Part shown: piece by piece, positions 3,840 to 58,756 of the stretch
Layout: each line of letters begins with the position of its first letter
Numbering within the stretch: position 1 is the stretch's first letter
NCBI RefSeq assembly: GCF_032191835.1
Contig: NC_083236.1
Coordinates: 33,046,001 to 33,110,000, forward strand
Direction of reading: 5' to 3'
DNA length: 64,000 bases
Source: Heteronotia binoei
Taxonomy: Eukaryota
Translations under genes and position numbers: made by a program
The notes under the pieces: generated by a model
The model's input: only the letters and a program-made list of their open reading frames with translations
Told to the model about the DNA's origin: nothing
Databases searched by the model: none

Positions 3840-4277
3840 CAGGGGTGGCCAAACTGTAGCTCAGGAACCACATGTGGCTCTTTCACACACATTGTGTGGC
3901 TCTTGAAGCCCCCACTGCCCTGCTGGCTGGCAGCTTGGAGAATAAATGTAAAGTTGCTTTCTTTCCTCCTCTTCTTCCCTNNNNNNNNNNNNNNNNNNNN
4001 NNNNNNNNNNNNNNNNNNNNNNNNNNNNNNNNNNNNNNNNNNNNNNNNNNNNNNNNNNNNNNNNNNNNNNNNNNNNNNNNNNNNNNNNNNNNNNNNNNNN
4101 NNNNNNNNNNNNNNNNNNNNNNNNNNNNNNNNNNNNNNNNNNNNNNNNNNNNNNNNNNNNNNNNNNNNNNNNNNNNNNNNNNNNNNNNNNNNNNNNNNNN
4201 NNNCATGTGTTGCGGCTCTCAAACATCTGGCATTTATTCCATGTGGCTCTTACGTTAATCAAATTTAGCCACCCCTG
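3840..4277. mobile_element. hAT-type non-autonomous element spanning the assembly gap
   Basis: CAGGGGTGGCCAAA...TTTAGCCACCCCTG terminal inverted repeats; 8-bp TSD ATTACCTT/ATTATCTT. Confidence 0.85.
3981..4203. other. Assembly gap (223 N)
   Basis: Run of N inside the hAT element. Confidence 0.99.
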
Positions 4278-9563: not shown

Positions 9564-10479
9564 CTGTTGAGAAAAGTAATTATTTTAAATTATACTGTAG
9601 TATATAGTATAAACTCAGTTACACTGAATTTTCTCCTATGTGACCCCCATCAGTAATACAGCACCTACTGATATGTTTCTGGGTGCCCTCCCCAAAGCTT
9701 TCACTTCTCCAAATCAAAAAGCCAGTCCTCATTTTCTTTTGCCACATCAGAACAGGTTTTCCAGAACAGACCAGTATTTCCCATGTGTCTGAAATCTGAG
9801 GCATACCTTTCCTGAATTAAAACTGAAGATACTCTTAACTCTTGCCCCTGAAAAGATTTAGTTGCAGAGCATGTCAGAATACAAAGTGCCTGTCCTCAAA
9901 AGAGCCTATCCTCAGTGTTTCTGCAGGAATCACTGTTCTGTACTTCTGCTGCATCAGAAGTGCAGCCATTCTGCACCCAGGATATGCTGACTGGAAGGCA
10001 GGCAACTCCAGACTTGTGTATCATACAGAGATATAACAGGCAACCTCCTCAAGGGTGGGAATTCTGTAGTACTGAGTGACTTAATGATTCAGTGCAGTAG
10101 AATTTCCAACCCTTTAAAAGAGACAGATTGGAAGGAGGCCAGTACAGAACAGTAAATCAAGTAGAGATGCAGGAGACAATCTTCTCTCTGACTGTGCAAT
10201 TTACTCTAAATTTGTAATTAATTTATTTTCTCATGGCAAATTAATAGTTTTCCCATGGCACATAATTTTTTGCAATTCTGTTTGTAAGGCACACTGAGGG
10301 TATCTTTGCCTGTGGGCCATTTACTGTCCTAGTTTTCCCTGACATATTAAAACTAGCAGTGTTTGTAAGAGATTACATTTATGATTCCAGAATAATTTAC
10401 ACTGGAGTCAGTGCCCTCCTGATTTCACTGTTCTGTAAAACTGGTATAAAAGGAAGTAAGATATTTAAAGGTACATTAC

Positions 10480-10555
10480 CTATCCCTGCTTGTGCAGTGA
10501 TCCATGGCAGCCGGAGGTAAAGAATGACGCCCCAAATATTAAGCATGCACCGAAT
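10480..10555 (-). CDS. SLC12A3: NCC exon 3 (76 bp)
   Basis: [25 protein letters not shown] (TM1); tag acceptor, gtaatg donor. Confidence 0.97.
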
Positions 10556-11458
10556 CTAGAAGGGAAAGCAACAGTAATAGCTGGACAGAATCACTACAAC
10601 TTAGCCAGAACAAAACCTCAGGAACAGGGAAGTAACTCAGATGTCGGGACAAATTCAGTCAGCACCTGAATGAAGGTGTCAAAGCCTGAAGCTGTAAGGT
10701 CCTGCACTCATCTGACAACAGAGCCTGGGATTAGTCCTGGATAGGAGAACAATTGGGAGGCTTGTTTGGCAGAATCAAAATGGGTGAAGAGACAGAGGTG
10801 GCATGCACTGATGTGTATATGCATGCTTAAATATTCTCTCATGGGGGGGGGGGGGGATTCCTGAAGATTAAAAAATAGCATGACAAGAGAAAGTACCAGA
10901 CTTTATGCATTCACAGCCCCTCCAATAGAGTTCTAGATTGATCCACTAAATCTTTGAATCCAATTTGATGGTGCTCCTCACCAATTTTGTTTGTCATAAA
11001 AGGAAGGATTCTGCAAGAAACCACCATAGTGTTTCCTGGTTCATCTCCTCCCTGATTCTGATTCTGGCTGTCTTCCTCCAGTTTATGTTGCCCTCTCATA
11101 CCATGGGGTTAGTGAAAGTCTGTGAGTTGGTAGAACTTATTCCCTCTGATGCTTGATGTTATTGCTGCTTGCATGGTTTCATAACGGCCAAAACTATTAC
11201 AAGAGTTGCCTTTTAAAAACAGTTTTCACAGGGGAACCGGAGAAACCTGTGCTGGAAGAGTGGAGGAGCGCTCAGCAACAGGTCCAGTTGCATTGTCAAG
11301 CTGAGATCTTGAAGTGGGTTGCCTTGAGAAGCCCACTGTGGCTTTGGCCATGTACTTGTCATCCTGTCTCAGATAGTGGGAATAGTGTTAGGCCAGAAGG
11401 CCTGAAATCTGTTGCACCCCGCCCCCCCCCAACAAAATGTAGTTCTTAAATGAAAATG

Positions 11459-11580
11459 AAATCATAGAATCATAGAGTTGGAAGGGACCTCTAGAGTCAT
11501 CTAGTTCAACCCCCTGTACAATGCAGGAACTTCATAAATGCCTTCTCCACACATGTACATCCCCAGTGACCCCTGCTTCA
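11459..11580 (-). mobile_element. CR1 LINE 3' end fragment
   Basis: AATCATAGAATCATAGAGTTGGAAGGGACC.CTAGAG.TCATCTAGT.CAACCCC is the reverse complement of the typical CR1 (ATTCTATG)n terminus. Confidence 0.75.
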
Positions 11581-13066
11581 TGCCGAGGAGGAGCTCCGTG
11601 CAGTCCCTGCTGTAGTCCGAACATCGGGGCGGGGGGGGACACAAGTAGGTAGCCTCACCTACAGCACCTGGCACCAGTCCTGCTCATTCCCATCTTTGTT
11701 CCTGCCCTGAATTTCTAGCTGACCTGCAAGCCACCTCCACCTGGCCTCCTTGGAAACTAACATCAGCAGAAGAAGGGCTCTTTTTGGATGATCATGGGAC
11801 TTTTAAAAAAGCCATTTTCTTGACTGAGTTGTGCACCAGATGAATAACATCTGATTAAGTCTGAGAATGGCTTCCAGATGTTGGGGGTGCTGGTTAATCC
11901 CACATACCTCACATAACTTTTTCTTCCTTGTTGAATGGTTATGGTTCTTACCCCTGCTTTTCTCGTTCTACAGTCTGAGATCCAAACCTTTATACTTTTC
12001 CTTCCATCAATCCTCTCCCATCAACATTTTAAAAACTGGGAGAATTTGAATTTTGAAAGTAGAATAAATCATTCAAGTATTAGGCAAATTTTCTGAGCCC
12101 TCTGATGTTGCCAAAACTATTTGATTGATCTAAAATAGGCCGAGGTTAATAAATAATTCAACTGTTAGGTGTGACAAAATAATTTTATTGATTCAAAATA
12201 GACCTAATTTGTGGTTTTTAAAATTCTGTATTTTACAGTGAAATGAAACTCAGTTATAGTAAGGATTATTGCTTACAGTTAAGGAGTACAGCAATACAAC
12301 TGACCTGAAAGAAATATAAAATAAGTAGTTGTGCTATAAAATAAGAGCCTTTAATGTGTTACGAGGAGGGAGGTGTCATTTTTGGCTACTGTTTTTTTCA
12401 TTCAAGGTACTGGAGTCTAATAAACCCCCATGCTTTTAAAATAAAAACTCATTTTTTAAAATGGTTGAATACAATCAGATCCTATCTGCTGTCTTCACTG
12501 TAGTCCCCCTGCCACATGGCTTTTGTTCATATAGTCCCACAGTCCTTTGCATAGGTTTTTTTGGTGATCAAAAGAGGCTGCTCCTCCCTCTCTTGCCAAT
12601 AGAAAAGTCAGCAGCACCCAATCAACACCAATGAGATCAACCATTTGAACCCAACAGTTTCCCCTTTTATTATACGTGAATATACAGAATCTCATGCGGG
12701 CACAGGTTAGAAGGAAAGGTTTTACCTATTTATTTAATATTTGGGGGTGGGAGGAGGTGGGAGTCTGTTCTCGTCACATCTCAGAAGCTAAACAGGGTCT
12801 ATTTGGATGAGAGACCACCAAGGAAGACTCTGCAGAAGAAGGCAATGACAAACCACCTCTGCTCACTTGCCTTGAAATGCTATTGGCTGGGGCTGCCATA
12901 AGTCATTTGAGAGCCTTGTCAGCACTTACATATGTTTAGGAGGTGGGTTAAATTCCTCTGACATAATGCATCTAGTTTGCAGAAAATGAGTTTCCCCATC
13001 ATAACAAAATAGAAGATTTACAAGCAGGCCTAGCATCACTGTGCTACATTGCAACTGTCAACTTAC

Positions 13067-13213
13067 CATCACCCCTTTAACCCACCCAAAACGAACAGGC
13101 TCGCTCTGGGGGTTCTCGGCCCCCTCACTGGCCACTTCTTCCGTTTCTTCTTCAGAAAGGCCATCGTTTCTGTGAAGTTCATATGCTGGGGGACGGATGT
13201 GGATACTTTCTTG
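13067..13213 (-). CDS. SLC12A3: NCC exon 2 (147 bp)
   Basis: QESIHIRPPAYELH...EPVRFGWVKGVM; acceptor ttacag, donor ATG|gtaagt; same length as the human exon as recalled. Confidence 0.95.
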
Positions 13214-14339
13214 CTGTAAGGGTGGGGGGGAGCCAGTGGTGAAAAAGAAGGAAGTCAGGACAAGACAGTGATTAAGAACACAATTCAGCACTGGAGTGTC
13301 TACAACAAGACCGTGTGAGGGGATCTGAAGGCAAGCTGGAGCTTTAAACACAACTGCTTGGGATGCAAGTGGGGAGAATTGAGGCAATTTCATAAAAAGG
13401 TGCACGTATAACCTCCATAGCTGATACAATAGGCACATGTTGCACACATGTCTTGACTCTTAACTCTCACCAAGTAGAGAAGCATACTGCTAAATTCACA
13501 AGGAGTGCTGTATATGGGGGAAGCAGGATTGGTACTTCACCTCCCAGCTCTGCCAAGATATAGTTTTAAAGTAACATTTCCCTGCATTTTCTTCTGTGAC
13601 AACTTTGCTTCAAAGGCCCAATGCTTTGTCAGTATAATAAGAGCTCAATGTTCTAGTGGTCCCTCCAGCTGGGAACCTCAACTTAATGCATCTCCTGAGC
13701 TCTCAGAAGATGGGACCTGAGAGGGTTGAGTATGATTCATTATTGGGGAAGGAATGCTCTATACATATGCTCATTGGTATTCTCTTTTTTATCATGAACC
13801 TCTTATGTTCAATGGAGACGAAGCCTGGCACTCAAAACTGTTCCCTTATAACCCCTATCTCAAACTGATGCATGTTCAGACTCAAATATGAGAGGGAAAA
13901 CTTACAAAGCTTCAAAGACCCTTAGCGCAGTTCAGGTATCTCCTGCTCAGTCTGAACATTCTGGTGTTATCAAGGTAATTGGCAGGTGGATCCACTTCCC
14001 AAAATGCAAGCAAGGAAGTGTAAGATAAGGAACAGTTCTGTTTTTCAGAGCTGCTTTCCTGCATTGTTCTTTTCATTAGAGTCAGGAGAAGAGAGGAAAG
14101 CAGTGGTGCTAAAGACTCTGAAGGAATATCCCTGGGCAAGGGGGGAAAGTTGCATTAAAATGTTTGGCAAACAATACAAGAGAATAAATAACATTGACTT
14201 CCTCTTGCTAGGATAGGAAATGGAGAACAGTCAATGCTGCCTACTAGCTCAAGATATTACTAAGTTTGGAGGACAGATAAGAGGAAAGCCACCCAATTTT
14301 GCCAAGACGGCATCAGAGAGCACCCTTGTTTGCCTTTAC

Positions 14340-14642
14340 CTTGAGGAATGAGTGCAGATCAGCAAGGGTGGGTCTGGGATTCTTGGTTTCATTGGTGATC
14401 TTTGTGTTGGCATAGTGCTCGTAAGCCGGCACAACGTCAATTGTATTGTAGCCGAAGGTCCGCATATAGAAAGTGCTGTTGGTGGTGAGGTGGTTGGCTT
14501 GGGTGGTGTCGTATGGGGCCGTATCTGTCTGCCCGTAATGCATCCTGCCGTTGTCCTCAGTGCCGATCAGGGTGCTGATAGTGAACCTCCCGTTGGAGCG
14601 TGCTGGGTCAGTATTTCGTTCTGACACTGGCAATTCAGCCAT
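14340..14642 (-). CDS. SLC12A3: Na-Cl cotransporter NCC, coding exon 1 (303 bp)
   Basis: Translates MAELPVSE...GRFTISTL...[24 protein letters not shown]...[12 protein letters not shown], matching the NCC N-terminus (RFTI SPAK/OSR1 docking motif and TFGYNT phospho-cluster). ATG at 14642-14640; donor AAG|gtaaag. Confidence 0.97.
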
Positions 14643-14739
14643 TTCATTTCCTTGGATGTTGTTTGTGACTCTCTTCCGACAGGTATGGGGTGGTGTAGGT
14701 TTGGGGCATATAGTGCAACATAATAAGAACCATGAGAAC

Positions 14740-14745
14740 TTTATA
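14740..14745 (-). promoter_or_regulatory. Candidate TATA box of SLC12A3
   Basis: Minus strand gggTATAAAgtt, about 98 bp upstream of the ATG. The position is plausible but this is inference only. Confidence 0.45.
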
Positions 14746-15155
14746 CCCGGCAAAACCAGAAAGAACTGACTGACCCTCTATTCAATTAACTCCCAACAGA
14801 GGGAATGAATTGGTTTGAACCATCTTAAGCTGGTTGTAGGAAATAATAGCCTGGAGGAATATCTAAATACTTACTCACCAACTTCTAGTTCCAGATCAAG
14901 CATATGATAACAGATTTGGCATTAAGTCCTCAGGACAGACCTGCTAAAAACACCAGGTTGATAGGAGGCTGGGATGGAAGAACTTCTCTGATTCATTTTG
15001 TGTGGGTACATTCTGTTTCTTCTGTAGATTCGTTAGGTAGGACAAAAACAAGCCATGCCTTGCTGGAAAGGAGATGATTCATGGAAAGGAGATGATGAAT
15101 TTACAAAGCCACCTCAAACTGAGTTTGACCATTGGTTCAATAAGCCCAGTACTTA

Positions 15156-23330: not shown

Positions 23331-23414
23331 TGATGCAACCCTGGTGTAGTGAAATAGCCGGATAGTAAGATGCGCTTTTTGTCGGCCTGATTCACAACAC
23401 CAGCTGCAGCAACA
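23331..23414 (-). ncRNA. MIR138-2: microRNA precursor mir-138-2 (mature miR-138-5p at 23383-23405)
   Basis: The minus strand contains AGCTGGTGTTGTGAATCAGGCCG, an exact miR-138-5p. It is followed by a loop ending GCGCATCTTACTATCCG and the 3p arm GCTATTTCACTACACCAGGGT. The position between NUP93 and SLC12A3 matches known human synteny. Confidence 0.97.
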
Positions 23415-35037: not shown

Positions 35038-35229
35038 CAGGGCTTTTTTTTGTAGAAAAAGCCCAGCAGGAACTCATTTGCATATTAGGCCATACTCCCT
35101 GACATCACCATGGTTTCACACAGGCTTTTTGGTAGAAAAAGCCCAACAGGAACTCATTTGCATATTAGGCCACACACCTCGACACCAAGCCAGCCGGAAC
35201 TGTGTTCCTCCTCAAAAAAAAAAGCCCCG
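35038..35229. mobile_element. hAT-type MITE (CAGGGCTTTTTT terminal repeat family)
   Basis: Ends CAGGGCTTTTTTTT and AAAAAAAAAGCCCCG. The 8-bp TSD GTCATAAC is at 35030-35037; its right copy is split by the copia insertion. Confidence 0.85.
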
Positions 35230-35233
35230 GTCA

Positions 35234-35631
35234 TGTCGGAGCGGGAGTAGCAGAGTGAGGGAGATGACTTGCCCGACACAGGGCTTCAGGAAAGAAAATC
35301 AGGCAGACACGTGCAACTAGTGCCAAAAGGTGTATTAACATATATACACAACAAGTGCTCTCTTGTGCAGTCTATACAATATCACCTCCACGGACAAAGT
35401 GCTTCGCCTAACCACCATCTCACAGGGAGAGACCTGTGTGATGCACACACAGATCATATATAGTCCAAGCAGCCAATCCTGGCCATGCTGACTCAGCAGA
35501 TTGCATCACTTGGCTTCTGCCGGCTCAAGCCGGTCTGCTGATCAGGTCACTGTGACCTAGCCTGGCAGCTAGATCACCAGCTGTCATACTGTGGCTGTCA
35601 GACTGGGTTTATGTAGATTCTTGCTCCAACA
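35234..35631 (-). repeat. 3' LTR of the copia element (398 bp)
   Basis: Identical to the 5' LTR and preceded on the minus strand by a purine-rich tract. Confidence 0.97.
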
Positions 35632-35642
35632 CACCTCCTAAT
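35632..35642 (-). promoter_or_regulatory. Polypurine tract (short)
   Basis: Minus strand ATTAGGAGGTG directly abuts the TG of the 3' LTR. Confidence 0.75.
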
Positions 35643-35716
35643 CTATTTAAACCCAGTGCACCAAAACACTTTACACAGTTTACATACATGTCCACCAGCA
35701 ACATTACAGTTCATAT

Positions 35717-38377
35717 TTACGTAGCTCGGAACCCTTTCCGGAATTCGTTCAGGAACTCATCATGATTGTAAAACACATCATCGTGTTCCTGTTCAGCCAG
35801 CTCTTTCAGACGCTTGGCTTCAGCCTCCTTCTCCCTTGCCTCGCACTCTGCCACCCAGGCTTTCCATTTCTTAGCCTTTTCTTTTAACATTTCCTCAAAT
35901 CCGGGTGGGTCTGGATTGACAGTCAGAGTGACATAGGGACACTTGTACCTAGCGGGACGTTGGCCTTTGGTGGACCTGGCAGACACCCGTGGCCCTGTGC
36001 TTGGACCAGCTTTGTCTTCTTCGGGTTGCTCTGTTCCCACCTCCTGGGCTGGTTGCTCTGCCCCTGTAATTGGGTGTTGAACCTCCTGACTCTCACACTT
36101 TACCTCCAGTTCCTGCATTTGAGGCTCTGCCTCCTGACTCTGCTCGTCAGGCTCTGTGCCAGCATTCGGCTCACCTTCTCCAGCCCCACTGGGTGCCACC
36201 TCCTGGGCTGGAGTTCTGGGCTGCGCTCCAACATCGTTATCGCTACTTGGCAGCAGGACAAATTGTTTCTGCAAGGAGTGCAACCTTGGCCAGCTGCTTT
36301 CTTCATTGAACTGGGCACTCTTATTAAGTGTTATCTTGCTTTTGCTATTGCAGAAACGATAACACCTGGCCCTTGGCTTGTAGCCCAGAAAAATTAGGCT
36401 CTCTGCCCGGACATCCCCCTCCCCGCTACTCGTGGAGTGGATGCCAACCCGAGCCCGTGACCCAAAGACTTTTAAAGAACTCAAATCTGGGGTCTTGTTC
36501 AACAGTAACCTGTAAGGCACATTTTTCACAGTATTACACCAAACCCTGTTTTGCAAAAAAACGGCTGCATGTATGGTTTCTGCCCAATAGGTCATTGGCA
36601 GTTGTGCATCCTCTAACATGCAATACATCACATTCTGCAATACAGCCCCATGCCCATTTTCTCGGGGCGTTGCTGGGTTCGTCAGACGGTGGGCAATGCC
36701 CTTGTTTTCCAGCCAACGTTTCATCTGGTTAGATAAGAATTCCCCCCCTCTGTCGGTTTGTACAGCTAGGAGATTAACCCCTAATTGTCTCTCCACTGCT
36801 TTGACCCACTTGGTGAATGTCTTATACACCTCAGACTTATGCACCATGGTGAAAACCCACGCGTACCTCGTGTGGTCGTCGGTGGCCACCAAGCAGTATC
36901 TCCTCCCCGACAGACTCTTTGGCAATGGGCCAATAACGTCTAAATGGACTAGTTCCAGGGCTCGTGTGCTTTCCCTTGAGCTTTCTTTAGCAACAGCACA
37001 CGCCTTGCTTTTGGTCTTCTTGCAGACCTGGCAATCCAAGTAACATTTGCAAGGATTTACTTTCAAACTAGGCACGAGCTCCAGGGTTTTCTTTAACGCC
37101 CTAAATCCGCAGTGCCCAAGTCTCCTATGGAGCAAATGTATACAATTATTGTGCACAGGCTCATTCGACACCTGAGCCACCTGGGCACAATCATTCTGGA
37201 CCACATACAGTTTACCTTCCCTCTTTCCTGTCACAAGCAACTTTCCCCCACCTCCCAGGATTTTGCAGCAGGTTTTCTCAAATCTCACCTGGTATCCCTG
37301 GTCAAACAGTGTGCTAACACTCAACAGGTTAGACTGCAGTGAGGGTACATACAACACATTTTGCAACATACATTTCAGTGCAGGAAATTCCACATTGCCT
37401 GAGCAAACAGAATTGGCAGTGGTCCCATCAGCCAATCTCACATACTTATGCTCAGGACTGTCAATGTTTTTCAACAACTCCTTCTCGCAGCAGAGATGGC
37501 TCGTTGCCCCGGAGTCTAAAATCCAAGCAGACCCTGTGCTCTCTACTGCAGACGTGACCAGCCGGGTTGCTTCCTCACACGGGCTGGCGGTCCTCCGCTC
37601 TCGCCGCACACGCCCCCGCCTCTTCTCCCTCTCAGGGCAAGCTCGGAGCAGGTGCTGCGACGACCCGCATCCATAGCAGCGACGGACTGCAAACGCAGTC
37701 GGCTCCACTTCCTCCACCTTCGGACGCCTGCCAGCAGCAAAAGCTGGCTCATTCTTGGCTGTCTTCCCGGACACACCGATAACAGCACGCTGCCTGGCCG
37801 ACACCCCCGGACAGCTCACGGCCGCAATTCTCTCTTGGAAGTCAAGCATGTGGGCACAGACGTATTCCATGGTCAGGGTCGCTACGTCCACCGTCTCCAG
37901 AGAAGTTATCAGGGGAGTGTACTCAGGTGGCAACGACGACAGCAAAATGTACACTCTGTCGTCTGGAGCTACAGTCTTGCCTCTTGCCTCCAGCTCAACG
38001 AAACAGTCCGTTAGCCGTTTGATGTGATCTTTCACACACCCTCCAGCCGGCATAACGGTGCGGAACATCCTCCTTGTCAAGGCCATGAGGGAACCAGCAG
38101 TGGTGCTAACATGCACCGCACTCAACGCGTCCCAGGCAGCCTTGGGAGTGTCCTTCCCTCGCACATAAACCAGCTGGTCATCTCCTATAGATAGCACTAT
38201 GTTGGCCAGTGCCTTATCCGATAACACAGTCTCGGCAGGAGATAAGTCAGCAGGGGGGTTACTCACGAACAGCCATTGCCCTTCACGCTTGAGGTAGTGT
38301 TGCATTCTCAGGCTCCACACCGCGTAGTTGGCTGAGGTGAGCTTCTCAACGGCTACTCCAAGCTGTTGCTGAGCCAT
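35717..38377 (-). CDS. Copia polyprotein Gag-zinc knuckle-protease-integrase, 886 aa, ending where RT would begin
   Basis: KLTSANYAVWSLRM gag N-terminus; CX2CX4HX4C (C234-C247); WILDSGATSH protease (D288); HHCC H417/H422/C449/C452; integrase D480 and D542. No YVDD RT motif and no RNase H. Confidence 0.95.
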   Translation of the reverse strand: MAQQQLGVAVEKLTSANYAVWSLRMQHYLKREGQWLFVSNPPADLSPAETVLSDKALANIVLSIGDDQLVYVRGKDTPKAAWDALSAVHVSTTAGSLMALTRRMFRTVMPAGGCVKDHIKRLTDCFVELEARGKTVAPDDRVYILLSSLPPEYTPLITSLETVDVATLTMEYVCAHMLDFQERIAAVSCPGVSARQRAVIGVSGKTAKNEPAFAAGRRPKVEEVEPTAFAVRRCYGCGSSQHLLRACPEREKRRGRVRRERRTASPCEEATRLVTSAVESTGSAWILDSGATSHLCCEKELLKNIDSPEHKYVRLADGTTANSVCSGNVEFPALKCMLQNVLYVPSLQSNLLSVSTLFDQGYQVRFEKTCCKILGGGGKLLVTGKREGKLYVVQNDCAQVAQVSNEPVHNNCIHLLHRRLGHCGFRALKKTLELVPSLKVNPCKCYLDCQVCKKTKSKACAVAKESSRESTRALELVHLDVIGPLPKSLSGRRYCLVATDDHTRYAWVFTMVHKSEVYKTFTKWVKAVERQLGVNLLAVQTDRGGEFLSNQMKRWLENKGIAHRLTNPATPRENGHGAVLQNVMYCMLEDAQLPMTYWAETIHAAVFLQNRVWCNTVKNVPYRLLLNKTPDLSSLKVFGSRARVGIHSTSSGEGDVRAESLIFLGYKPRARCYRFCNSKSKITLNKSAQFNEESSWPRLHSLQKQFVLLPSSDNDVGAQPRTPAQEVAPSGAGEGEPNAGTEPDEQSQEAEPQMQELEVKCESQEVQHPITGAEQPAQEVGTEQPEEDKAGPSTGPRVSARSTKGQRPARYKCPYVTLTVNPDPPGFEEMLKEKAKKWKAWVAECEAREKEAEAKRLKELAEQEHDDVFYNHDEFLNEFRKGFRAT

Positions 38378-38523
38378 CGTGCCGACTCCTCCTCACAGCT
38401 GGCTGCCGACGTCCCTCTGGCTCTCAAACAGAGAACGGTGGTGCTTCTGTGTCCTTCACCGGCGTTCCTCGCCTCCGGCTCTTTCCAAACTCACAGTCAG
38501 CTCAACTCTCAACTCTCTCCTCC

Positions 38524-38554
38524 GCGCAGCGGAACCGCCCTGGGCCCATAACCC
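38524..38554 (-). promoter_or_regulatory. Primer-binding site complementary to the 5' half of initiator tRNA-Met
   Basis: Minus strand GGGTTATGGGCCCAG immediately after the 5' LTR (the Drosophila copia-type half-tRNA PBS), extending to a 28/31 match with tRNAi-Met nt 10-40. Confidence 0.92.
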
Positions 38555-38952
38555 TGTCGGAGCGGGAGTAGCAGAGTGAGGGAGATGACTTGCCCGACAC
38601 AGGGCTTCAGGAAAGAAAATCAGGCAGACACGTGCAACTAGTGCCAAAAGGTGTATTAACATATATACACAACAAGTGCTCTCTTGTGCAGTCTATACAA
38701 TATCACCTCCACGGACAAAGTGCTTCGCCTAACCACCATCTCACAGGGAGAGACCTGTGTGATGCACACACAGATCATATATAGTCCAAGCAGCCAATCC
38801 TGGCCATGCTGACTCAGCAGATTGCATCACTTGGCTTCTGCCGGCTCAAGCCGGTCTGCTGATCAGGTCACTGTGACCTAGCCTGGCAGCTAGATCACCA
38901 GCTGTCATACTGTGGCTGTCAGACTGGGTTTATGTAGATTCTTGCTCCAACA
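38555..38952 (-). repeat. 5' LTR of the copia element (398 bp)
   Basis: No mismatch with 35234-35631 by eye; both copies give the same 64-aa spurious ORF in the track. Confidence 0.97.
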
Positions 38953-41186
38953 GGTCATAACCTATTCCACCTTCAACTAGCTACTTCCTCTAGAACAGGA
39001 AAGCGGCATCTGGAAAAAGGGTATGACCATGCCTTTGAAGCTGACCTTCTTCCACACAAGAGAAACACAGCACAGATATGCCCGTTATCCCTTTCTCCAG
39101 AGTTAAGGCATGATGCTGAAACTAGAAGAAAACTACAACTTGGATCAAACTAAGTCCCAGTAAAACTGGACTGCCCCCCATTCCAATTTTTAATCTGAAG
39201 TCTGGATTTTTTTAAAATTTGCAGATTAAGGATTATTTCATTCTCTCCCATGGGCACAAGAGGTGGGAAATGTACCACCTTTAGACTCAGCTGAAAGTTT
39301 AGAACCAGGATTAATGTGCTGAAAAGGAGCTGGGCCCACAAAGTCAAACTGCAAGGGTCATTTCTGCAGCCAATCAGGCTGGAAACTGATAAGCAGATGC
39401 TGGCTGAAAACCTACAAAATGGATGACTCAGGAAATCAAAACGCTCCCAGACATGAAGCAAATTTGTCCATTTTCAGGCCTTTTATCTCCAAGTTTACTT
39501 TGCAGAGGGAAACAATTGCCTTATTGACAAACCTGCTTTAACGTATGTTGGAAAAATTACAAGTCATTTTTTTATTTGGCTTTTTAAAACAAGAAGATCT
39601 AGAAGATCTTCCCCTTCCCACAAGCAGTTTGCTTTCCAACAGGGACGCAACACGGTAATTAACACTGGTCCCTATTGGCTGGAAGGGTCAGCAGGATCTC
39701 AGGGAAAAAAATAATTACTGTTTTAAATGAATTTTTAATAATTCTCTGAGAGGCTGGTTTTTCAAAAGAGACACATGAATAATGAACAAACCTATTTTTT
39801 TCCTTCTCAGTATCACAGCTCTACAATATTGGCCAGACCCCGCCCTTTGGAACAAACTGAAGTGCTTGATCTTGTATGCACTTTTGGCCTGCTGTGTGAG
39901 CAGAAGCTCCAGTGGGCTCAAAATACCCTGGAGGAGGAAGTCCCATGCTCTAGAGTGCTGGACAGTGCTTCATATGCACAATGAGAATGAGCACAAGCGT
40001 TCCCCAGTGCTGCAAATAACAGGGTGCCGTCTGTGACCGTGGGGCTCTGTGTGTACATCCAAAGCCTTGAGGAACCCTGGAGAATAACAGTGTTTTTAAG
40101 AGAGGAAGCCACTTTGGGGCAATAGCTTTTCAGAGAGACAGAAATGTAGCCAACTTCCCCGAAGGTATGTCAAAAATGTAACACAGTGAGCTGGATTTAA
40201 ACTAAATTGGCAATTTCCACTGCTTCTCCTTCCTGTCACAGACTCCCCCCAAAAAACTGCTCCTCAGGGTCCCCTATCTCCCCATGAGCAGCGTTTCATG
40301 GAGATCAGTGACCTGCAGGGGGAGAGGCGAGGCAGGAAAGTTCCAGTGTGCTGATGGAAAATTTTGTCTGGACCCAGCCCAGGTTCTCTAATAGAGCTTA
40401 ATGGCATCCCTGAGGAAGGCTAAGGCTGCTCCGGTACTTTTGTCATTCCGCACAATGTGCAAAACAGTAATGTTCAGGGGGACACTTTTAAAAAGACTTT
40501 AGAAGTGTAGCAGAATGGCCGAGAGGGCACTTTTATGATAGAACAGGATTGTAGTTAATGGCAATGATTATTCTAACCGTTATCCAGCTATTACCGCAAC
40601 GTCTTCACTGTGCTTTCTTTGTAACCCCACTCACTACTTCATCTACAATATCATCTTGTCTTAGGCAGTTTGCTGTTTGCATTGTCTTTTCATTCTGTAC
40701 TAATGCACCGTTCGTTGGCTTCCTTTGCTGTATGGATACGTTGTTTTTATCTGGCAACCTGCCTCAAGTCTCGGTGAGGCAGGGTATAAATAAATAAAGG
40801 GTATAAATAAATAAAGCAAACAAATACCCCCAGTGGAATGCATCTAGCCACTGCTGAAAGGGAGCTGCAATGTGCTATTACAGTTAGGTTCAGCAGCACT
40901 TTCCATGCTCCCAGGACTGAGCTCAAAGGGGACCATGGCCACCAACTAAGAAACAGTAAGGTGCTTCTTCTCCAGCTATGGGCTGGATCCTGTTGTCTTT
41001 TCCACTGGCAGCAGTGGGAAGAGAGGCCTCTTTGGACCACTGAAACAAGCTATGCTAGTAATCACAGGACCTACATGAACAAAAGCCAGGTGGGATGGGG
41101 GCAACAGTGAGGATGATAATCGGGTGAGACCAAACAGAAAAATTGATAGGATACACCCCAGACTGTGAAGAATACATGCCTCATGT

Positions 41187-41884: not shown

Positions 41885-43286
41885 CTGTAATGGAAGATGC
41901 ATGAATAACAGCAGATAAGATCAAGTAGAGACAGAATAGAGCTACACTGATTTGAAAAAGCCCCATACTCATGGGCGGGATGTGCAACAGTGTGGTACAG
42001 CCTGATCTCGTCAGATCTCGGAAGCTGAGCGGGATCACTACTTGGATGGGAGAAGCCACCTAGGAAGACTCTGCAGAGGAAGGACCTCTGTTTCTCACCT
42101 GCTCTGAAAGCCCCTTGCCGAGGTCACTGTAAGTCTGTTGCAACTTGTGGCCATATACATTTTACTTTATAGAGAGACAGTGAGATACAGAGAGAAGCAA
42201 GTTTTTTGTACTATACCAACATATTTATTATACCATCCTTTGCTCTGATCAAGCTGATTTCATTTTCCATTTTCCATTGTACCTTTGGATCCTGGTTCCC
42301 AACAGGTCCTTCTTGGTAACACCCCACCCACCATCTGTCCTGGGTATAAGAGATGATGGATCTTCATTCTTGTTTCTATCTGACCAAGTGAGATTTGACT
42401 CATGAAAGCTTATGCCCTAAAAAATTGTGTTGGTCTCTAAGGTGCTGCTTTAATTTTATTAAATTTTATTAAGATTCACATAGGGACCAACATCTTTCCA
42501 AGCAATACAATAAGAAAATAATCTATATCATTTAAAATATTTCAACTGTAGTCTCTTAAAAAACAGAAAAACAAATTAAAATGGACTTGCCAACAAGGGG
42601 CAGGGAGTGAGAAAGCAAAAAAAATGAGAAAAATATTTCATTAACTTTATATAGATCAAACTGATGTTGCAACAACAGCTATGAACATATGAAGCTGCCT
42701 TACACTGAATCAGACCCTCGGTCCATCAAAGTCAGTATTTCCGTGCCTATTTGCCAGGACCCTTTTTAGCTGGAGATGCCAGGGATTGAACCTGGGACCT
42801 TCAGCTTACCAAGCAGATGCTCTACCACTGAGCCACCGTTTCTCCCCTACAGTTACCAAAGATGCAATACTGACATCATTGCAGGAATTTCCTTTTGTTC
42901 TTAGAAATATTCTAAAATAGGATACCAAACTGTTATGAAATCATTATAATCAGTGTTGTCTGTGTCTTCTGTTTTTGATAAGTCATGCTGAACTCGAATT
43001 TTATATATATATATATATATATACACATATATTTGCTGCCTCTCTCTCTCTCCCTCTGATTCTTACACAAAATGATAAACCCTGAATCAAAGTTGCATAA
43101 TCCCAGTAAGAGACTCAGGCCCTCATATGATTGGACAAAGACAACCCAAGACCCAGCATCACAACGGAGACCTGGGATTACCTTCTTCATGTCTTGGCTG
43201 TGAGTGTACCAAGAGAATCGGGCTTGCAGGAGTGCTAAGCCAAGTGAAACAAGGCAACTTGCAAGGGGAAAAAATCTGAAACTTAC

Positions 43287-43404
43287 ATCAAAGGCCTTGT
43301 CAATGTGACCCGCATGATATTCATCGAAAAAAGTGATCAGGTCTAATAGAAGGTAGAACGTAGAATTGATGGGCTTCTTGGCACTTATGCCCTGAGCTTT
43401 ATAC
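43287..43404 (-). CDS. NUP93: NUP93 exon (118 bp, exon 19 equivalent)
   Basis: [39 protein letters not shown]; cag acceptor, gtaagt donor. Confidence 0.97.
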
Positions 43405-44857
43405 CTGGAAGAAACAAGAGTGATTAGACAGGTGGCAACTGCGGTTAATGAGTACATGCAATGTGGTGTCCTTGGGCAGCTCAATGGTCAGAAAAACTAT
43501 AGTCCAGAGAATACATCACAGCCAGCATGGTGTAATGGTTTAGAATGTTGGACTAGGATCTGGAAGACCCAGGTTCGAATCCCCACTCTGCCATGGAAGC
43601 TTGCTGGGTGACTTTGGGCTAGTTGCATGCTTTCAGCCTAACCTACCTCATGGGGCTGTTGTGAGGATAAAATGAAGGAGGAGAATTACGTAAGCCACCT
43701 TGGGTTCTGATTGGGGAGAAAGGCGGGGTATAAATAAAGCAAGTAGATAAATAAGAACGCTTAGCCTTTATGCAGCACTTTAAAGGGCAAGTGATTTTAG
43801 TGAAGTGTTACAATCTATCTGAAATAACTGTCCTTCTGCATGGCATTTATTGTGTATTTTATTTAGTTATTGTTGGAAGCTGCCTCATGAACGGATTGCA
43901 GGAAAGTGAACTCCAAGTATATTCAACAAAGTGTTCAAAGTGCTTCACCTGTGTTCTTCCAGCCCTTCACCTGGCACTAAGTTTATTAACTTTGGGGCCA
44001 CAGGTGTACCTTTATTCCCGAAGCTCTTTGTCGATGGGGTGCTGCCCCCCACCCCGCTGTCTTCTTTGCTTCTTCATCACATACCTGCCAAGGTGTTGTT
44101 TTCAAAGGCTGATCTGCTGCAATTCGTTCTTCTGATTATTCTAGTTCTACTGTTTATCGAGTTAACATTTTAACTGGTGTGTTTTACGGTTTTCATCATA
44201 AGAGACTGTAAACAGTCTCATGAGCAAGATGTGGTATGAACATACTAAATGGGCAAATGTTTTTTTCCAATCTTTATGATGTCTTTCTAAGGCCAGCCGT
44301 TTTAATTATTCCCAGATAGTAACAAGGAATAACTTGAGGCTTTGAGATGGCCTCTAGCACGTCCCTGGCTGAGGTAAGCTTTGAAGGACGGATTCTTTGC
44401 TTTTTACAGTTCAGTCTCTTAGCAAGTATGCTATGCTAACTCTCAGATTGTTTGGGTTTTTGTTGCGGGCGTGGTGTAATGATGCAGAGAAACAGATTAC
44501 CAGATTTGGAGGAAAGAATTTAATGTTATTTGCCCATGGTCATTTGCCCATGCCCAGAACTCTGTATGAAGGGACAGGTTTTCAAGGTCATTTTCATGGC
44601 AATTCCTCTTCATTCAAACCATGTCACAAAACTGACAGACTTTGTGCCTGCCTCAGACTCCCATGGAACAAGGTGGGCCTTGCTGGCCACTAAGAGGGGC
44701 ACAGGCAGTCTCTGCCTGTATACTAGGCCCATTCAGTGTGTAGCAAATTTCTGAGATATGTTTTTTTTAAAAAGAGACAAGCTTGACTTTTATACCTCAA
44801 TAGGTTTCTTCTCAGAGAAAGAACTGCCTGACATTAAAGGCTCCACTCTCTGTGTTT

Positions 44858-56912: not shown

Positions 56913-57547
56913 CTTTATCAAACTCAGTTCCCCGTTTGTAAAATGGGAATAACTCTGATCCATCTTGCAGGAATATTATTGGTGGAAGGCATATACCAAT
57001 CCTCAGTTTCTTCATTTGTTCTTAAACAGATACTCGACTGAAGAAAAGTGGAGTATTTCTAACAAAAACCTACAGAGCAATTTTATTCAATTAATGGTGC
57101 AAACCCAATGCAGAATGAGCCCAAAAGAAGAAGTTTGGGTTTACAGCAGTAAAAACTGTTAGCTGCATCCACTGTCACTCTTCACATGTATTGAGCAGTC
57201 ACTACAGAGGCACACATTAGTTCAAACTAGATCCCTCCCTTTTGGCCTGATACTAGAAGGCGCTGAGATTGGAATGGCTTCACTGCCCTGTATGTTGCAA
57301 GATCTTAGCAAGAACCCTGTGGGGCGTGATTGCTCTTGGCAGATCATATCCAGTAAAATGTTAGAAGGTGGATTTAAATGCACAGCAATCTTGGCTGTTC
57401 ATATCCAGTAAAAATGTTAGAAGGGGGATCTAAATATACAGCAAATGGGAGTACACTTTCAGAAGTTCAAAACTGTAACTGAAGGAAGGAGAGACAGAAA
57501 TGAGACATGCTAGCTCTGAAAATTAGGAAAGACAAAAGCAGAATTAC

Positions 57548-57713
57548 CTTCAGCCAAAGGTAATCCTCCGTTTTATCAGCAACTTCACTGTGGTTATCAG
57601 CAATGTCGCACCGGCCTATGATGCAGTAAACAGCTCTTTTGTAAGGGTCGGTGTTGTTTCTCAAGGCTCGTCTGTAATGGAGGCGAACCTTGTTCTCAGT
57701 GCCAGGAGACAAC
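57548..57713 (-). CDS. NUP93: NUP93 exon (166 bp, exon 11 equivalent)
   Basis: [55 protein letters not shown]; cag acceptor, gtaatt donor. Confidence 0.98.
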
Positions 57714-58756
57714 CTGCAATTGAAAGAAGACACATTATCAGATGGAAGGCCTGGAAAACACCAGGCTTGTAGCCTCCTCATTCCCAGCACTATCCTCCTC
57801 CAGGCAGCAGCCTGACCACCCCACTCCACCAAGGCTGAGCACAAGCAGCTTCCCTGAAACATACAGGCTGTACTGCTCCCATATGCCCCTGTGCTGGTTT
57901 TTACCCTGGTCCCCCCTGACCTTGTTAGCTGCAGAGGGCACAGCACTGGAAGGAGTCCCTAGTGAGTAAGGCAATAGGTGCAGCTCCCCAGAATAAATGC
58001 AAAATGCACACACCCTTAGCAGAATCTGCAAACAGAAATAAGCCATGAGTTCAGAAGGCACTACTCATTCATTGGCAGGATGTTGGAGAAGGCAGCGAAG
58101 TCATGGCCAGCAGAGGAAGCAGGAAGGCATACCAGCCTCTGAAATGGCATCTACAAGATCAGGGGCTCTTCAGGGCACCACAGAGCAAAGTGATTTGCTT
58201 TCTTTCCTCTGCTTCCTCCCCTTCACATGTCCTCTTGTACTTGCCTTGGGATTTTTAACTCATTATGCTTCATCACCTCTCTCTATTCTCTCTGTCTCCA
58301 AGGTGCAAAAAAGCCCAAAACGTTTGGTGCAAAAGTATTCCCGGTGTCAACACAGTGGGCACAGCTGCAACTCCCTCTCTATAACACCCAGCAGAGCATC
58401 CTCAGCATGCGGCTTCAGCAGGTCTGATGACTGCAGGGTTTGCACTAAGACTGGAATGGTGGGGTGAATTTTTTTTTTTACTGTTAATAAACCAGTTTCA
58501 TGGGGAAGTTTCTGCATGTTTTTCAGTAGGTTCTTCCCCTGTGAAAAACTCACAGCTTTGTAGTCCTGACTTCAAGATATTGCACAGAACTTAATACACA
58601 TGCAAGGCCAATGCCGCTCTCTGTTTTCACAGGAGTGTACAACGAGGCATCAGAGTTGCACGTTCTCAGCAAAACTATTTCCCCTGCTGCCGGTTGCTCT
58701 CCCCTTTTTCCCTCCCTTCCCTCAATCTCCTGCTTCTTCCAGAGACTGCCCGGTAC

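What the first reader, a model, noticed from the sequence alone, without database searches (positions are those of the whole stretch)
35234..38952. Very young copia retrotransposon that has no reverse transcriptase: a parasitic non-autonomous lineage in a reptile
Seen: the 398-bp LTRs show no mismatch by eye, the TSD is perfect, the interior is rich in CpG, and the 886-codon ORF has no stop or frameshift. That ORF covers Gag, zinc knuckle, protease and integrase, but only 85 bp separate its stop (35717) from the 3' LTR, so RT-RNase H is absent. Established: LTRs are identical at insertion, and copia replication needs RT and IN. Inference: this 3.7-kb structure was itself reverse-transcribed and integrated recently using enzymes from an autonomous partner, while keeping PBS, PPT and Gag. 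This suggests a helper/parasite copia pair active in this lineage. Copia elements are a minor, poorly characterised class in amniotes. A one-off deletion after insertion is the alternative.
Basis: partly seen in the sequence, partly recalled or inferred. Interest (0 to 1): 0.85.

Follow-up and report, generated by a model that had tools for sequence, protein, structure and literature searches.

The report
Young RT-less copia element, lizard-type
This is a real, very recently inserted copia retrotransposon that has lost its reverse transcriptase/RNase H and also the catalytic residue of its integrase, so it cannot copy itself; whether it belongs to a multiplying "parasite" lineage could not be tested here.

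Summary
Window 35234-38952 (minus strand) is a 3,719-bp LTR element. It has two 398-bp LTRs with no mismatch, TG..CA ends and a perfect 5-bp target-site duplication (TGACC). Its PBS is complementary to the anticodon stem-loop of initiator tRNA-Met, it has a purine-rich stretch (putative PPT), and its CpG content is twice the background. One open 886-codon ORF encodes copia Gag, zinc knuckle, protease and integrase.

No RT or RNase H is detectable in any frame. Homology to RT-bearing relatives stops at the first motif of the RT N-terminus.

New here: the integrase lacks four residues, including the catalytic Glu of the D,D,E triad. That Glu is present in 114 of 115 full-length relatives. The copy therefore needs RT/RNase H, and probably integrase, in trans.

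The nearest relatives are lizard (Podarcis lilfordi) copia elements at only 38-44% identity; the one examined is RT-bearing.

No tool here holds a reptile genome, so "multi-copy parasitic lineage" versus "one-off defective copy" remains open.

As proof of principle, I found in another assembly an RT-less copia of the same architecture. It has at least 4 copies with different target-site duplications (TSDs) and dN/dS of about 0.2.

Verdict: a non-autonomous deletion derivative, which is a known kind; moderate interest.

The parts
35229..35233 (-). Target-site duplication, 3' side (TGACC read on the minus strand)
   Evidence: identical to 38953-38957
35234..35631 (-). 3' LTR, 398 bp, TG...CA
   Evidence: 398/398 identical to the 5' LTR
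35632..35643 (-). Purine-rich stretch read as the polypurine tract (GATTAGGAGGTG) abutting the 3' LTR
   Evidence: The Podarcis relative L001 has AGGAGGAGTG|TGTTGG at the same place. Function inferred from position.
35644..35716 (-). Rest of the 85-nt untranslated stretch between the stop codon and the 3' LTR
   Evidence: no similarity to anything
35717..38377 (-). Single open reading frame, 886 codons plus stop: Gag, zinc knuckle, protease, integrase, linker, first motif of the RT N-terminus, 41-codon tail
37829..38341 (-). Copia-type Gag (DUF4219 + Retrotran_gag_2, aa 13-183)
   Evidence: E 1.1e-22; 0 of 6 conserved columns changed
37637..37678 (-). CCHC zinc knuckle (aa 234-247, CYGCGSSQHLLRAC)
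   Evidence: C234, C237, H242, C247 invariant
37292..37525 (-). Protease region (Pol_BBD, aa 285-362; active-site motif D288-S-G-A)
   Evidence: 0 of 10 conserved columns changed
37010..37210 (-). Integrase N-terminal HHCC region (gag_pre-integrs, aa 390-456; H417, H422, C449, C452)
36665..36964 (-). Integrase catalytic core (rve, aa 472-571); D480 and D542 present
36644..36655 (-). Codons 575-578 (G-H-G-A), which span the site of the integrase lesion. Four residues are missing, the catalytic Glu among them: the element reads NG----HGAVLQ where the Podarcis relative reads NGVAESRGGVLQ. The column holds Glu in 114 of 115 full-length relatives and Ala here.
36290..36499 (-). Integrase C-terminal SH3-like domain (aa 627-696)
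   Evidence: E 2.6e-12
35843..35989 (-). Last stretch homologous to RT-bearing relatives (aa 797-845): the R.S.RS.KG..P.RY motif and the W..A..E motif that immediately precede Pfam RVT_2 in relatives
35720..35842 (-). 41-codon C-terminal tail of unknown origin; no RT, RNase H or other similarity. The RT-RNase H deletion junction lies at or near its start.
38378..38539 (-). 5' untranslated leader between PBS and ATG
38540..38554 (-). Primer-binding site GGGTTATGGGCCCAG. It is the perfect complement of nt 26-40 (anticodon stem-loop) of initiator tRNA-Met, the 'half-tRNA' type of Drosophila copia and Ty5.
   Evidence: tRNA sequence as printed in PMC8216282 and PMC8274982. Same PBS in the Podarcis relative. 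Priming mode.
38555..38952 (-). 5' LTR, 398 bp
38953..38957 (-). Target-site duplication, 5' side (TGACC)

Best explanation
The element is a non-autonomous deletion derivative of an active lizard copia family.

It keeps every cis signal needed to be copied:
- identical LTRs;
- a PBS for the initiator tRNA-Met half-molecule;
- a purine-rich stretch in the PPT position.

It keeps an apparently sound Gag, zinc knuckle and protease. It has lost all of RT-RNase H and the catalytic Glu of integrase.

Proposed mechanism (inferred):
1. Its 3.3-kb RNA was packaged into particles that contained RT/RNase H and integrase made by an autonomous relative in the same genome.
2. The RNA was reverse-transcribed from the tRNA-iMet half primer.
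3. The cDNA was integrated with a 5-bp duplication very recently.

I take both lesions to have been on the template RNA already.

Shown: the structure, its youth, the missing RT/RH, the broken integrase, the intact cis signals.
Inferred: trans-complementation, and that the lesions predate insertion.
Untested: copy number and the partner.
For: Anatomy and youth:
- 398/398 identical LTRs, a 5-bp TSD, CpG o/e 0.51 against 0.225 in the rest of the window.
- No RT/RH in any frame, with working positive controls.
- Integrase Glu and three neighbouring residues are absent.

Why the lesions probably predate insertion:
- There are two independent lesions in a copy whose LTRs have had no time to take a single substitution. 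They are more easily explained by inheritance over at least two defective cycles than by two hits in one cycle or after insertion (inference).

The rest of the ORF is sound:
- Gag and protease show 0 of 16 departures at conserved columns.
- Integrase is otherwise conserved. Of its 5 departures, 2 are shared with the Podarcis relative.

Cis signals:
- The PBS exactly complements tRNA-iMet nt 26-40.
- The PBS and the PPT/LTR start match the RT-bearing Podarcis relative.

Feasibility:
- An RT-less copia of the same architecture is multi-copy in assembly ERZ26858995, with different TSDs.
- Its ORF is under purifying selection: dN/dS 0.14-0.23.
- Its nearest RT-bearing relative among the best 120 listed is 77% identical.
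- Copia is active in lizards (PMC7561263).
Against: - No second copy, solo LTR or RT-bearing partner was seen. None is in the window and none in any reachable collection, though none of those holds a reptile genome.
- A well-adapted semi-autonomous lineage, like the comparator, would be expected to keep its integrase. This one did not.
- Apart from the one lesion, the integrase shows no drift, so any lineage must be very young.
- The intact ORF is no evidence of selection, because the copy is too young to have decayed.
Confidence: 0.45

Rival explanations
1. One-off defective copy. An autonomous full-length element was the template, and RT jumped between short homologies during the very cycle that made this insertion, deleting RT-RNase H. 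The integrase lesion arose either in the same cycle or sat in an otherwise full-length parent. There is no RT-less lineage.
For: - Identical LTRs and a TSD fit equally well.
- The comparator's deletion lies between two 8-9-nt near-repeats (CCAATTGGA / GCAGTTGGA) in its RT-bearing relative. That is the signature of template switching, so this route to RT-less copia is real.
- Apart from the single lesion, the integrase is as conserved as in autonomous elements, which suggests very recent descent from an autonomous parent.
Against: It needs two separate deletions (12 bp and roughly 1.4 kb) in one cycle, or a parent that was itself already integrase-defective and so already non-autonomous.
Confidence: 0.3
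2. Deletion after insertion. A full-length autonomous copy inserted here, and the RT-RNase H region (and the 12 bp in integrase) were lost later by illegitimate recombination or replication slippage.
For: Zero differences in 398 bp only bounds LTR-LTR divergence below about 0.75% at 95%. At an assumed 1-2e-9 substitutions per site per year that is under about 2-4 million years, which leaves time for a deletion (inference).
Against: - At that bound only one or two indels are expected in the 2.9-kb interior, and the most likely number is zero. Two are observed.
- No substitution has hit either LTR.
- CpG is undecayed.
Confidence: 0.15
3. Assembly artefact. Reads from several copies of a young repeat were collapsed or mis-joined, creating a false internal deletion or false LTR identity.
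For: Young, near-identical repeats are error-prone in assemblies. The window holds one gap (N run 3981-4203), but it is 31 kb away.
Against: - The structure is coherent: one continuous ORF across the junction, matching TSDs, no N, and no abrupt composition change inside the element.
- A chimeric join would rarely leave an open frame and perfect TSDs.
Confidence: 0.05

Closest known systems
Copia element of Podarcis lilfordi, OX395139.1:8077434-8099334 (locus L001, element 9580-14195; gene model CAI5791960.1 = P0108)
   Same: - Closest sequence relative found: 38-44% amino-acid identity.
- Same PBS (GGGTTATGGGCCCAG) directly after an LTR ending ...GACA.
- Same PPT/LTR start (AGGAGG.GTG|TGTTGG).
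- Same clade-specific residues (HLLHRRL, WAE[ST]I).
   Different: - It is 4.6 kb long and carries RVT_2 (E 3.7e-56) and an RNase H/C-terminal ORF ending 10 nt from the LTR.
- Its integrase keeps NGVAE.
- It is a different family in a different host.
RT-less 3,050-bp copia lineage in ENA assembly ERZ26858995 (P0003 cluster; loci L004-L007), found here
   Same: - Same architecture: LTR-PBS-Gag-PR-IN-SH3-linker-start of RT-short tail-LTR.
- The deletion starts at the same place, just after the W..A..E / LP..K motifs.
- The LTR pairs are identical within each complete copy.
   Different: - Shown to be multi-copy: at least 4 loci, with different TSDs at the three complete ones (AGATT, CTTGT, GAACC).
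- Copies are 96.8-97.5% alike, with dN/dS 0.14-0.23.
- The integrase is intact (NGVSER).
- The deletion is in frame and keeps the last ~26 residues of the polyprotein.
- Only 32% identical to the reptile ORF.
- The host is unknown, probably an invertebrate.
Mouse IAP I-delta-1 and ETn/MusD (non-autonomous ERV derivatives mobilised by full-length partners); from established knowledge, not tested here
   Same: - Vertebrate LTR elements with internal deletions.
- They keep LTR, PBS and PPT and are copied by proteins supplied in trans.
- They can outnumber their helpers among new insertions.
   Different: - They are endogenous retroviruses, not copia.
- I-delta-1 keeps its RT.
- ETn has no coding capacity.
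Plant non-autonomous LTR retrotransposons: BARE-2, TR-GAG, LARD, TRIM (PMC13570524)
   Same: - Dependence on an autonomous partner with retention of the cis signals.
- BARE-2 is copia-type.
- TR-GAG elements keep an open gag.
- In sugar beet, 15 families keep at least one partly decayed pol domain besides GAG/PROT.
   Different: - BARE-2 lacks Gag, not RT.
- TR-GAG keeps gag only.
- LARD and TRIM are non-coding.
- All are plant elements.
- None is described with an open Gag-PR-IN frame and a clean loss of RT-RH.
Drosophila copia and yeast Ty5 (Kikuchi 1986; Ke 1999, cited)
   Same: The PBS is complementary to the anticodon stem-loop of initiator tRNA-Met ('half-tRNA' priming). Gag-PR-IN order and a 5-bp TSD.
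   Different: They are autonomous elements with RT-RNase H. Similarity to them was not measured here.

Membership tests
Ty1/copia LTR retrotransposons (Pseudoviridae) | LTRs with TG...CA ends flanked by a 5-bp target-site duplication | tested here: met
   398-bp LTRs, TGTTGG...CCGACA, TSD TGACC
Ty1/copia LTR retrotransposons (Pseudoviridae) | Copia-type Gag and protease | tested here: met
   PF14223 E 1.1e-22, PF22936 E 1e-19; DSGA motif
Ty1/copia LTR retrotransposons (Pseudoviridae) | Integrase placed upstream of RT (order PR-IN-RT-RH) | tested here: inconclusive
   The integrase follows the protease and is followed by the motifs that precede RT in relatives, but RT itself is absent, so the order cannot be completed.
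Ty1/copia LTR retrotransposons (Pseudoviridae) | Copia-type reverse transcriptase (RVT_2), the usual basis of classification | tested here: not met
   none in any frame. Membership therefore rests on Gag, PR, IN and the cis signals; this is a defective derivative.
Ty1/copia LTR retrotransposons (Pseudoviridae) | PBS for initiator tRNA-Met | tested here: met
   15/15 nt complementary to nt 26-40 of the published tRNA-iMet sequence
Non-autonomous LTR retrotransposon (helper-dependent) | Lacks at least one enzyme needed for its own replication | tested here: met
   No RT/RNase H; integrase catalytic Glu missing
Non-autonomous LTR retrotransposon (helper-dependent) | Keeps the cis signals for transcription, priming and integration (LTRs, PBS, PPT) | tested here: met
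   The PPT is identified by sequence and position only.
Propagating RT-less lineage (helper/parasite pair) | Several copies with the same deletion junction at different sites with different TSDs | not testable with these tools
   None in the window. No reptile genome is searchable. The exact ORF, tail, LTR 30-mer and peptide patterns found nothing.
Propagating RT-less lineage (helper/parasite pair) | An RT-bearing partner in the same genome sharing LTR, PBS or packaging region | not testable with these tools
   No copia RT in the window. The closest RT-bearing relative found is in another species at 38% identity.
Propagating RT-less lineage (helper/parasite pair) | Purifying selection on the retained ORF among RT-less copies | not testable with these tools
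   Only one copy is available. It was shown only for the unrelated comparator lineage.
TR-GAG | Retains gag as the only coding domain | tested here: not met
   Protease and integrase domains are also present
LARD / TRIM | No coding capacity in the internal region | tested here: not met
   886-codon ORF with five copia domains

The most novel reading that the evidence does not exclude
The source lizard genome harbours an actively multiplying copia sub-lineage that has shed RT-RNase H, and in this branch integrase function as well, while keeping Gag and protease. It lives off an autonomous partner. That would make it the copia counterpart of mouse IAP I-delta-1/ETn-MusD, and a vertebrate parallel to the selected RT-less copia lineage found here in another animal assembly.
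Probability: 0.4. Interest if true: 0.55.

Novelty: new member of a known kind. Interest (0 to 1): 0.35.

Why it matters
If the RT-less form proves to be multi-copy, it would be a vertebrate helper/parasite pair within Copia, a superfamily lost from birds and mammals. It would give a natural system for asking which retrotransposon proteins act in cis (Gag, protease) and which are freely shared (RT, integrase).

The insertion is young enough to be polymorphic. It sits between NUP93 exons and the mir-138 precursor, so it could serve as a population marker.

If it is a single defective copy, it is routine. It would show only that an autonomous copia family was active in this genome within the last few million years.

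Tried and rejected
**Searches for other copies of this family**
- Exact look-up of the ORF found nothing.
- A word-indexed search and an exhaustive HMMER search of 5.8 and 1.84 billion proteins gave best hits of only 31-44% identity.
- The tail alone (aa 700-886) found nothing.
- A PPT/LTR 30-mer and back-translated peptide patterns found nothing in metagenome or viral contigs.

**Searches for a remnant of RT/RNase H**
- tblastn with 60 full-length relatives found nothing significant.
- Smith-Waterman alignment against the Podarcis element in all frames gave z below 3.
- Profiles of the last 120 and 45 residues found nothing, while both controls were positive.

**Leads dropped as not significant**
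- A by-eye match of one frame (...YVNMNCNVAGG..., stopping 11 nt before the LTR) to the conserved Y..T..N.AD..TK end of copia polyproteins got no statistical support.
- A recurring weak antisense hit of the RNase H 'DADWAG' motif at element position 2704-2751 (best E 0.007 among 60 queries) is judged chance, because all queries share the motif.
- MAFFT's placement of the tail's 'HDDVF' against the RT motif 'YDEVF' is not reproducible in a second alignment.

**Splicing as the origin of the deletion**
- It cannot be tested for the reptile element without a parent.
- For the comparator, the boundaries in the RT-bearing relative are short direct repeats, not GT...AG.

**Technical**
- A first attempt at the conserved-column test timed out and was rerun with a faster alignment.
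Full report
**1. The observation**

The feature is real and lies on the minus strand.
- Two 398-bp direct repeats, 35234-35631 and 38555-38952, are identical at every position.
- Read 5' to 3' on the minus strand they begin TGTTGG and end CCGACA.
- They are bracketed by the same pentamer TGACC, at 38957-38953 and 35233-35229.
- Between them lies one open frame of 886 codons, 38377 to 35717.
- The stop codon is 85 nt from the 3' LTR.
- CpG observed/expected is 0.51 in the element and 0.225 in the other 60 kb of the window.
- No other copy or solo LTR is present in the window.

**2. Coding content**

Pfam finds the following:
- copia Gag (PF14223, E 1e-22, plus DUF4219);
- the copia protease barrel (PF22936, E 1e-19, with D288-S-G-A);
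- the pre-integrase HHCC region;
- the integrase core (rve, E 1e-12);
- the SH3-like integrase C-terminal domain.

A CX2CX4HX4C knuckle sits at aa 234-247.

There is no RVT_2 and no RNase H. This was checked three further ways.
- tblastn with the RT-RNase H halves of 60 full-length relatives gave nothing significant in the element. A smaller probe set gave nothing in the whole window.
- Profiles were built from the last 120 and last 45 residues of 115 full-length copia polyproteins. They found the C-terminus of the Podarcis relative, which was not in the model, at E 5e-29 and 6.5e-15.
- The same profiles found the 26-residue remnant in an RT-less comparator at E 1.4e-6, but nothing in any frame of this element.

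Pairwise and multiple alignments show where homology ends.
- It runs through the linker and the R.S.RS.KG..P.RY motif.
- It continues through the W..A..E motif, to about aa 845.
- In the Podarcis relative, Pfam RVT_2 starts about seven residues after that point.

Roughly 450-470 residues (about 1.4 kb) are therefore missing. The last 41 codons and the 85-nt trailer have no recognisable origin.

**3.

- In all three alignments the integrase reads TPRENG----HGAVLQNVMYCML. Relatives read TPQQNGVAERxNRTL....
- The closest relative reads TPQENGVAESRGGVLQ.
- The column of the catalytic glutamate holds Glu in 114 of 115 full-length relatives and Ala here, and four residues are absent.
- The two aspartates (D480, D542) and the HHCC residues are in place.

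By the established D,D-35-E rule for retroviral-type integrases, this integrase should be catalytically dead. That is an inference from sequence and was not assayed.

At 46 columns conserved in at least 90% of 115 relatives, the departures are:
- Gag: 0 of 6;
- protease: 0 of 10;
- integrase: 5 of 30.

Two of the five integrase departures (W416L, A601T) are shared with the Podarcis relative. Two more are the lesion itself. The protein is therefore otherwise in good order. It has one clean lesion and no long drift.

**4. Cis signals**

- The 15 nt after the 5' LTR are GGGTTATGGGCCCAG (38554-38540).
- They are the exact complement of nt 26-40 of initiator tRNA-Met as printed in two papers.
- This is the anticodon stem-loop, 'half-tRNA' mode of priming known for Drosophila copia and Ty5.
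- The Podarcis relative has the same PBS.
- It also has the same purine-rich stretch and LTR start: AGGAGGAGTG|TGTTGG there, AGGAGGTG|TGTTGG here.
- The PPT assignment rests on sequence and position only.

**5. Relatives**

- The exact ORF is not on record.
- The best hits in 5.8 billion clustered proteins and in an exhaustive scan of 1.84 billion representatives are 31-44% identical.
- The best two with names are gene models of the lizard Podarcis lilfordi.
- One of them lies in a 4.6-kb element with 99% identical LTRs, RVT_2 and an RNase H-end ORF.
- The family is thus a lizard-type copia clade whose normal form is RT-bearing.

**6. What could not be done**

The decisive test is to count copies with the same junction in the source genome. 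It is out of reach, because no tool here holds a reptile genome. The tail peptide, a PPT/LTR 30-mer and peptide patterns found nothing in the collections available.

**7. How it most likely works**

The copy cannot make RT or RNase H, and very probably cannot integrate with its own integrase. Yet it has the hallmarks of a fresh integration. So enzymes came from elsewhere, unless the lesions arose after insertion.

Zero differences in 398 bp bounds LTR-LTR divergence below about 0.75% at 95%. At an assumed 1-2e-9 substitutions per site per year that is under about 2-4 million years. This is an inference and the rate is assumed.

Over that span, two separate deletions after insertion are unlikely but not excluded. 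Two deletions in a single reverse-transcription cycle are also unlikely. Inheritance from an already defective master is the simplest account of two lesions in a copy with no point divergence.

My estimates are:
- small RT-less lineage, 0.45;
- one-off template-switch product, 0.30;
- post-insertion deletion, 0.15;
- mis-assembly, 0.05.

**8. Proof of principle found on the way**

Among the distant hits, P0003 (842 aa, no RVT_2) drew attention.
- In ENA assembly ERZ26858995 there are at least four loci of a 3,050-bp copia. Three are complete and one is cut by a contig end.
- Each complete copy has 253-bp LTRs with no mismatch within the pair.
- The TSDs differ: AGATT, CTTGT, GAACC.
- The copies are 96.8-97.5% alike.
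- All have open 841-842-codon Gag-PR-IN frames with an intact NGVSER.
- Pairwise dS is 0.07-0.10 and dN/dS is 0.14-0.23.
- The nearest RT-bearing protein listed is 77% identical and comes from another assembly.
- Aligned to that relative, the deletion lies between two near-identical 8-9-nt repeats, CCAATTGGA and GCAGTTGGA. It starts right after the LP..RK.IG motif of the RT N-terminus and keeps the last ~26 residues in frame.

So an RT-less copia of this architecture can arise by template switching and then persist under selection.

**9. Comparison with what is known**

- Non-autonomous LTR elements mobilised in trans are well known. In plants there are BARE-2, TR-GAG, LARD and TRIM.
- In mouse there are IAP I-delta-1 and ETn/MusD (from knowledge, not tested here).
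- Copia is known to be active in lizards and absent from birds and mammals.
- My full-text searches found no description of a copia form with an open Gag-PR-IN frame and clean loss of RT-RH in a vertebrate. The library is partial, and Repbase could not be consulted.

**10. Verdict**

It is a new member of a known kind, of moderate interest.

Noticed in passing
L004:5724-8773, L005:2724-5773, L006:1-2938, L007:2724-5770 (ENA assembly ERZ26858995): A 3,050-bp RT/RNase H-less copia lineage. It has at least 4 loci; the three complete copies have identical LTR pairs and different 5-bp TSDs. All four have open 841-842-aa Gag-PR-IN ORFs with intact integrase. dN/dS is 0.14-0.23, and the deletion sits between 8-9-nt microhomologies. 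The nearest RT-bearing protein listed is only 77% identical. Other RVT_2-less clusters of 776-853 aa appear among its relatives (P0345, P0400, P0422, P0424, P0428). This looks like a selected 'semi-autonomous' copia type and deserves its own study.
   Followed up: partly
window 23334-23411 (-): mir-138 precursor (Rfam RF00671, 93.5 bits, E 6e-20), about 12 kb from the element and on the same strand.
   Followed up: no
window 42936-43484 (-), 57470-57946 (-), 14316-14753 (-): ORFs with exon-like matches to Nup93/Nic96 (the 57-kb one at E 2e-21; the 43-kb one is weak, E 9.5e-4 and below Pfam's cut-off) and to the N-terminus of an SLC12-type cation-chloride cotransporter (AA_permease_N, E 1e-22). 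The order NUP93, mir-138, SLC12A matches what I recall of human 16q13. The copia lies between the last NUP93 exon seen and mir-138, in the same orientation as these genes. Whether it is intronic or intergenic was not settled.
   Followed up: partly
window 42771-42843 (-): tRNA-Thr(GGT)-like sequence (ARAGORN; Rfam tRNA 47.6 bits), just downstream of the ORF with the weak Nic96 match. It may be a SINE head or a pseudogene.
   Followed up: no
window 35046-35107 and 35126-35187 (+): Two 62-nt direct repeats, 89% alike and 80 nt apart, immediately beside the insertion site. They are followed by a T10 run at the TSD and are probably part of an older repeat into which the copia inserted.
   Followed up: no
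L002 (Podarcis lilfordi OX395145.1:10198201-10220146): Three separate copia-like stretches within 22 kb. One (10001-12509) is of the same clade as the window's element (31-47% identity in pieces) and is broken by frameshifts.
   Followed up: no
   Followed up: no
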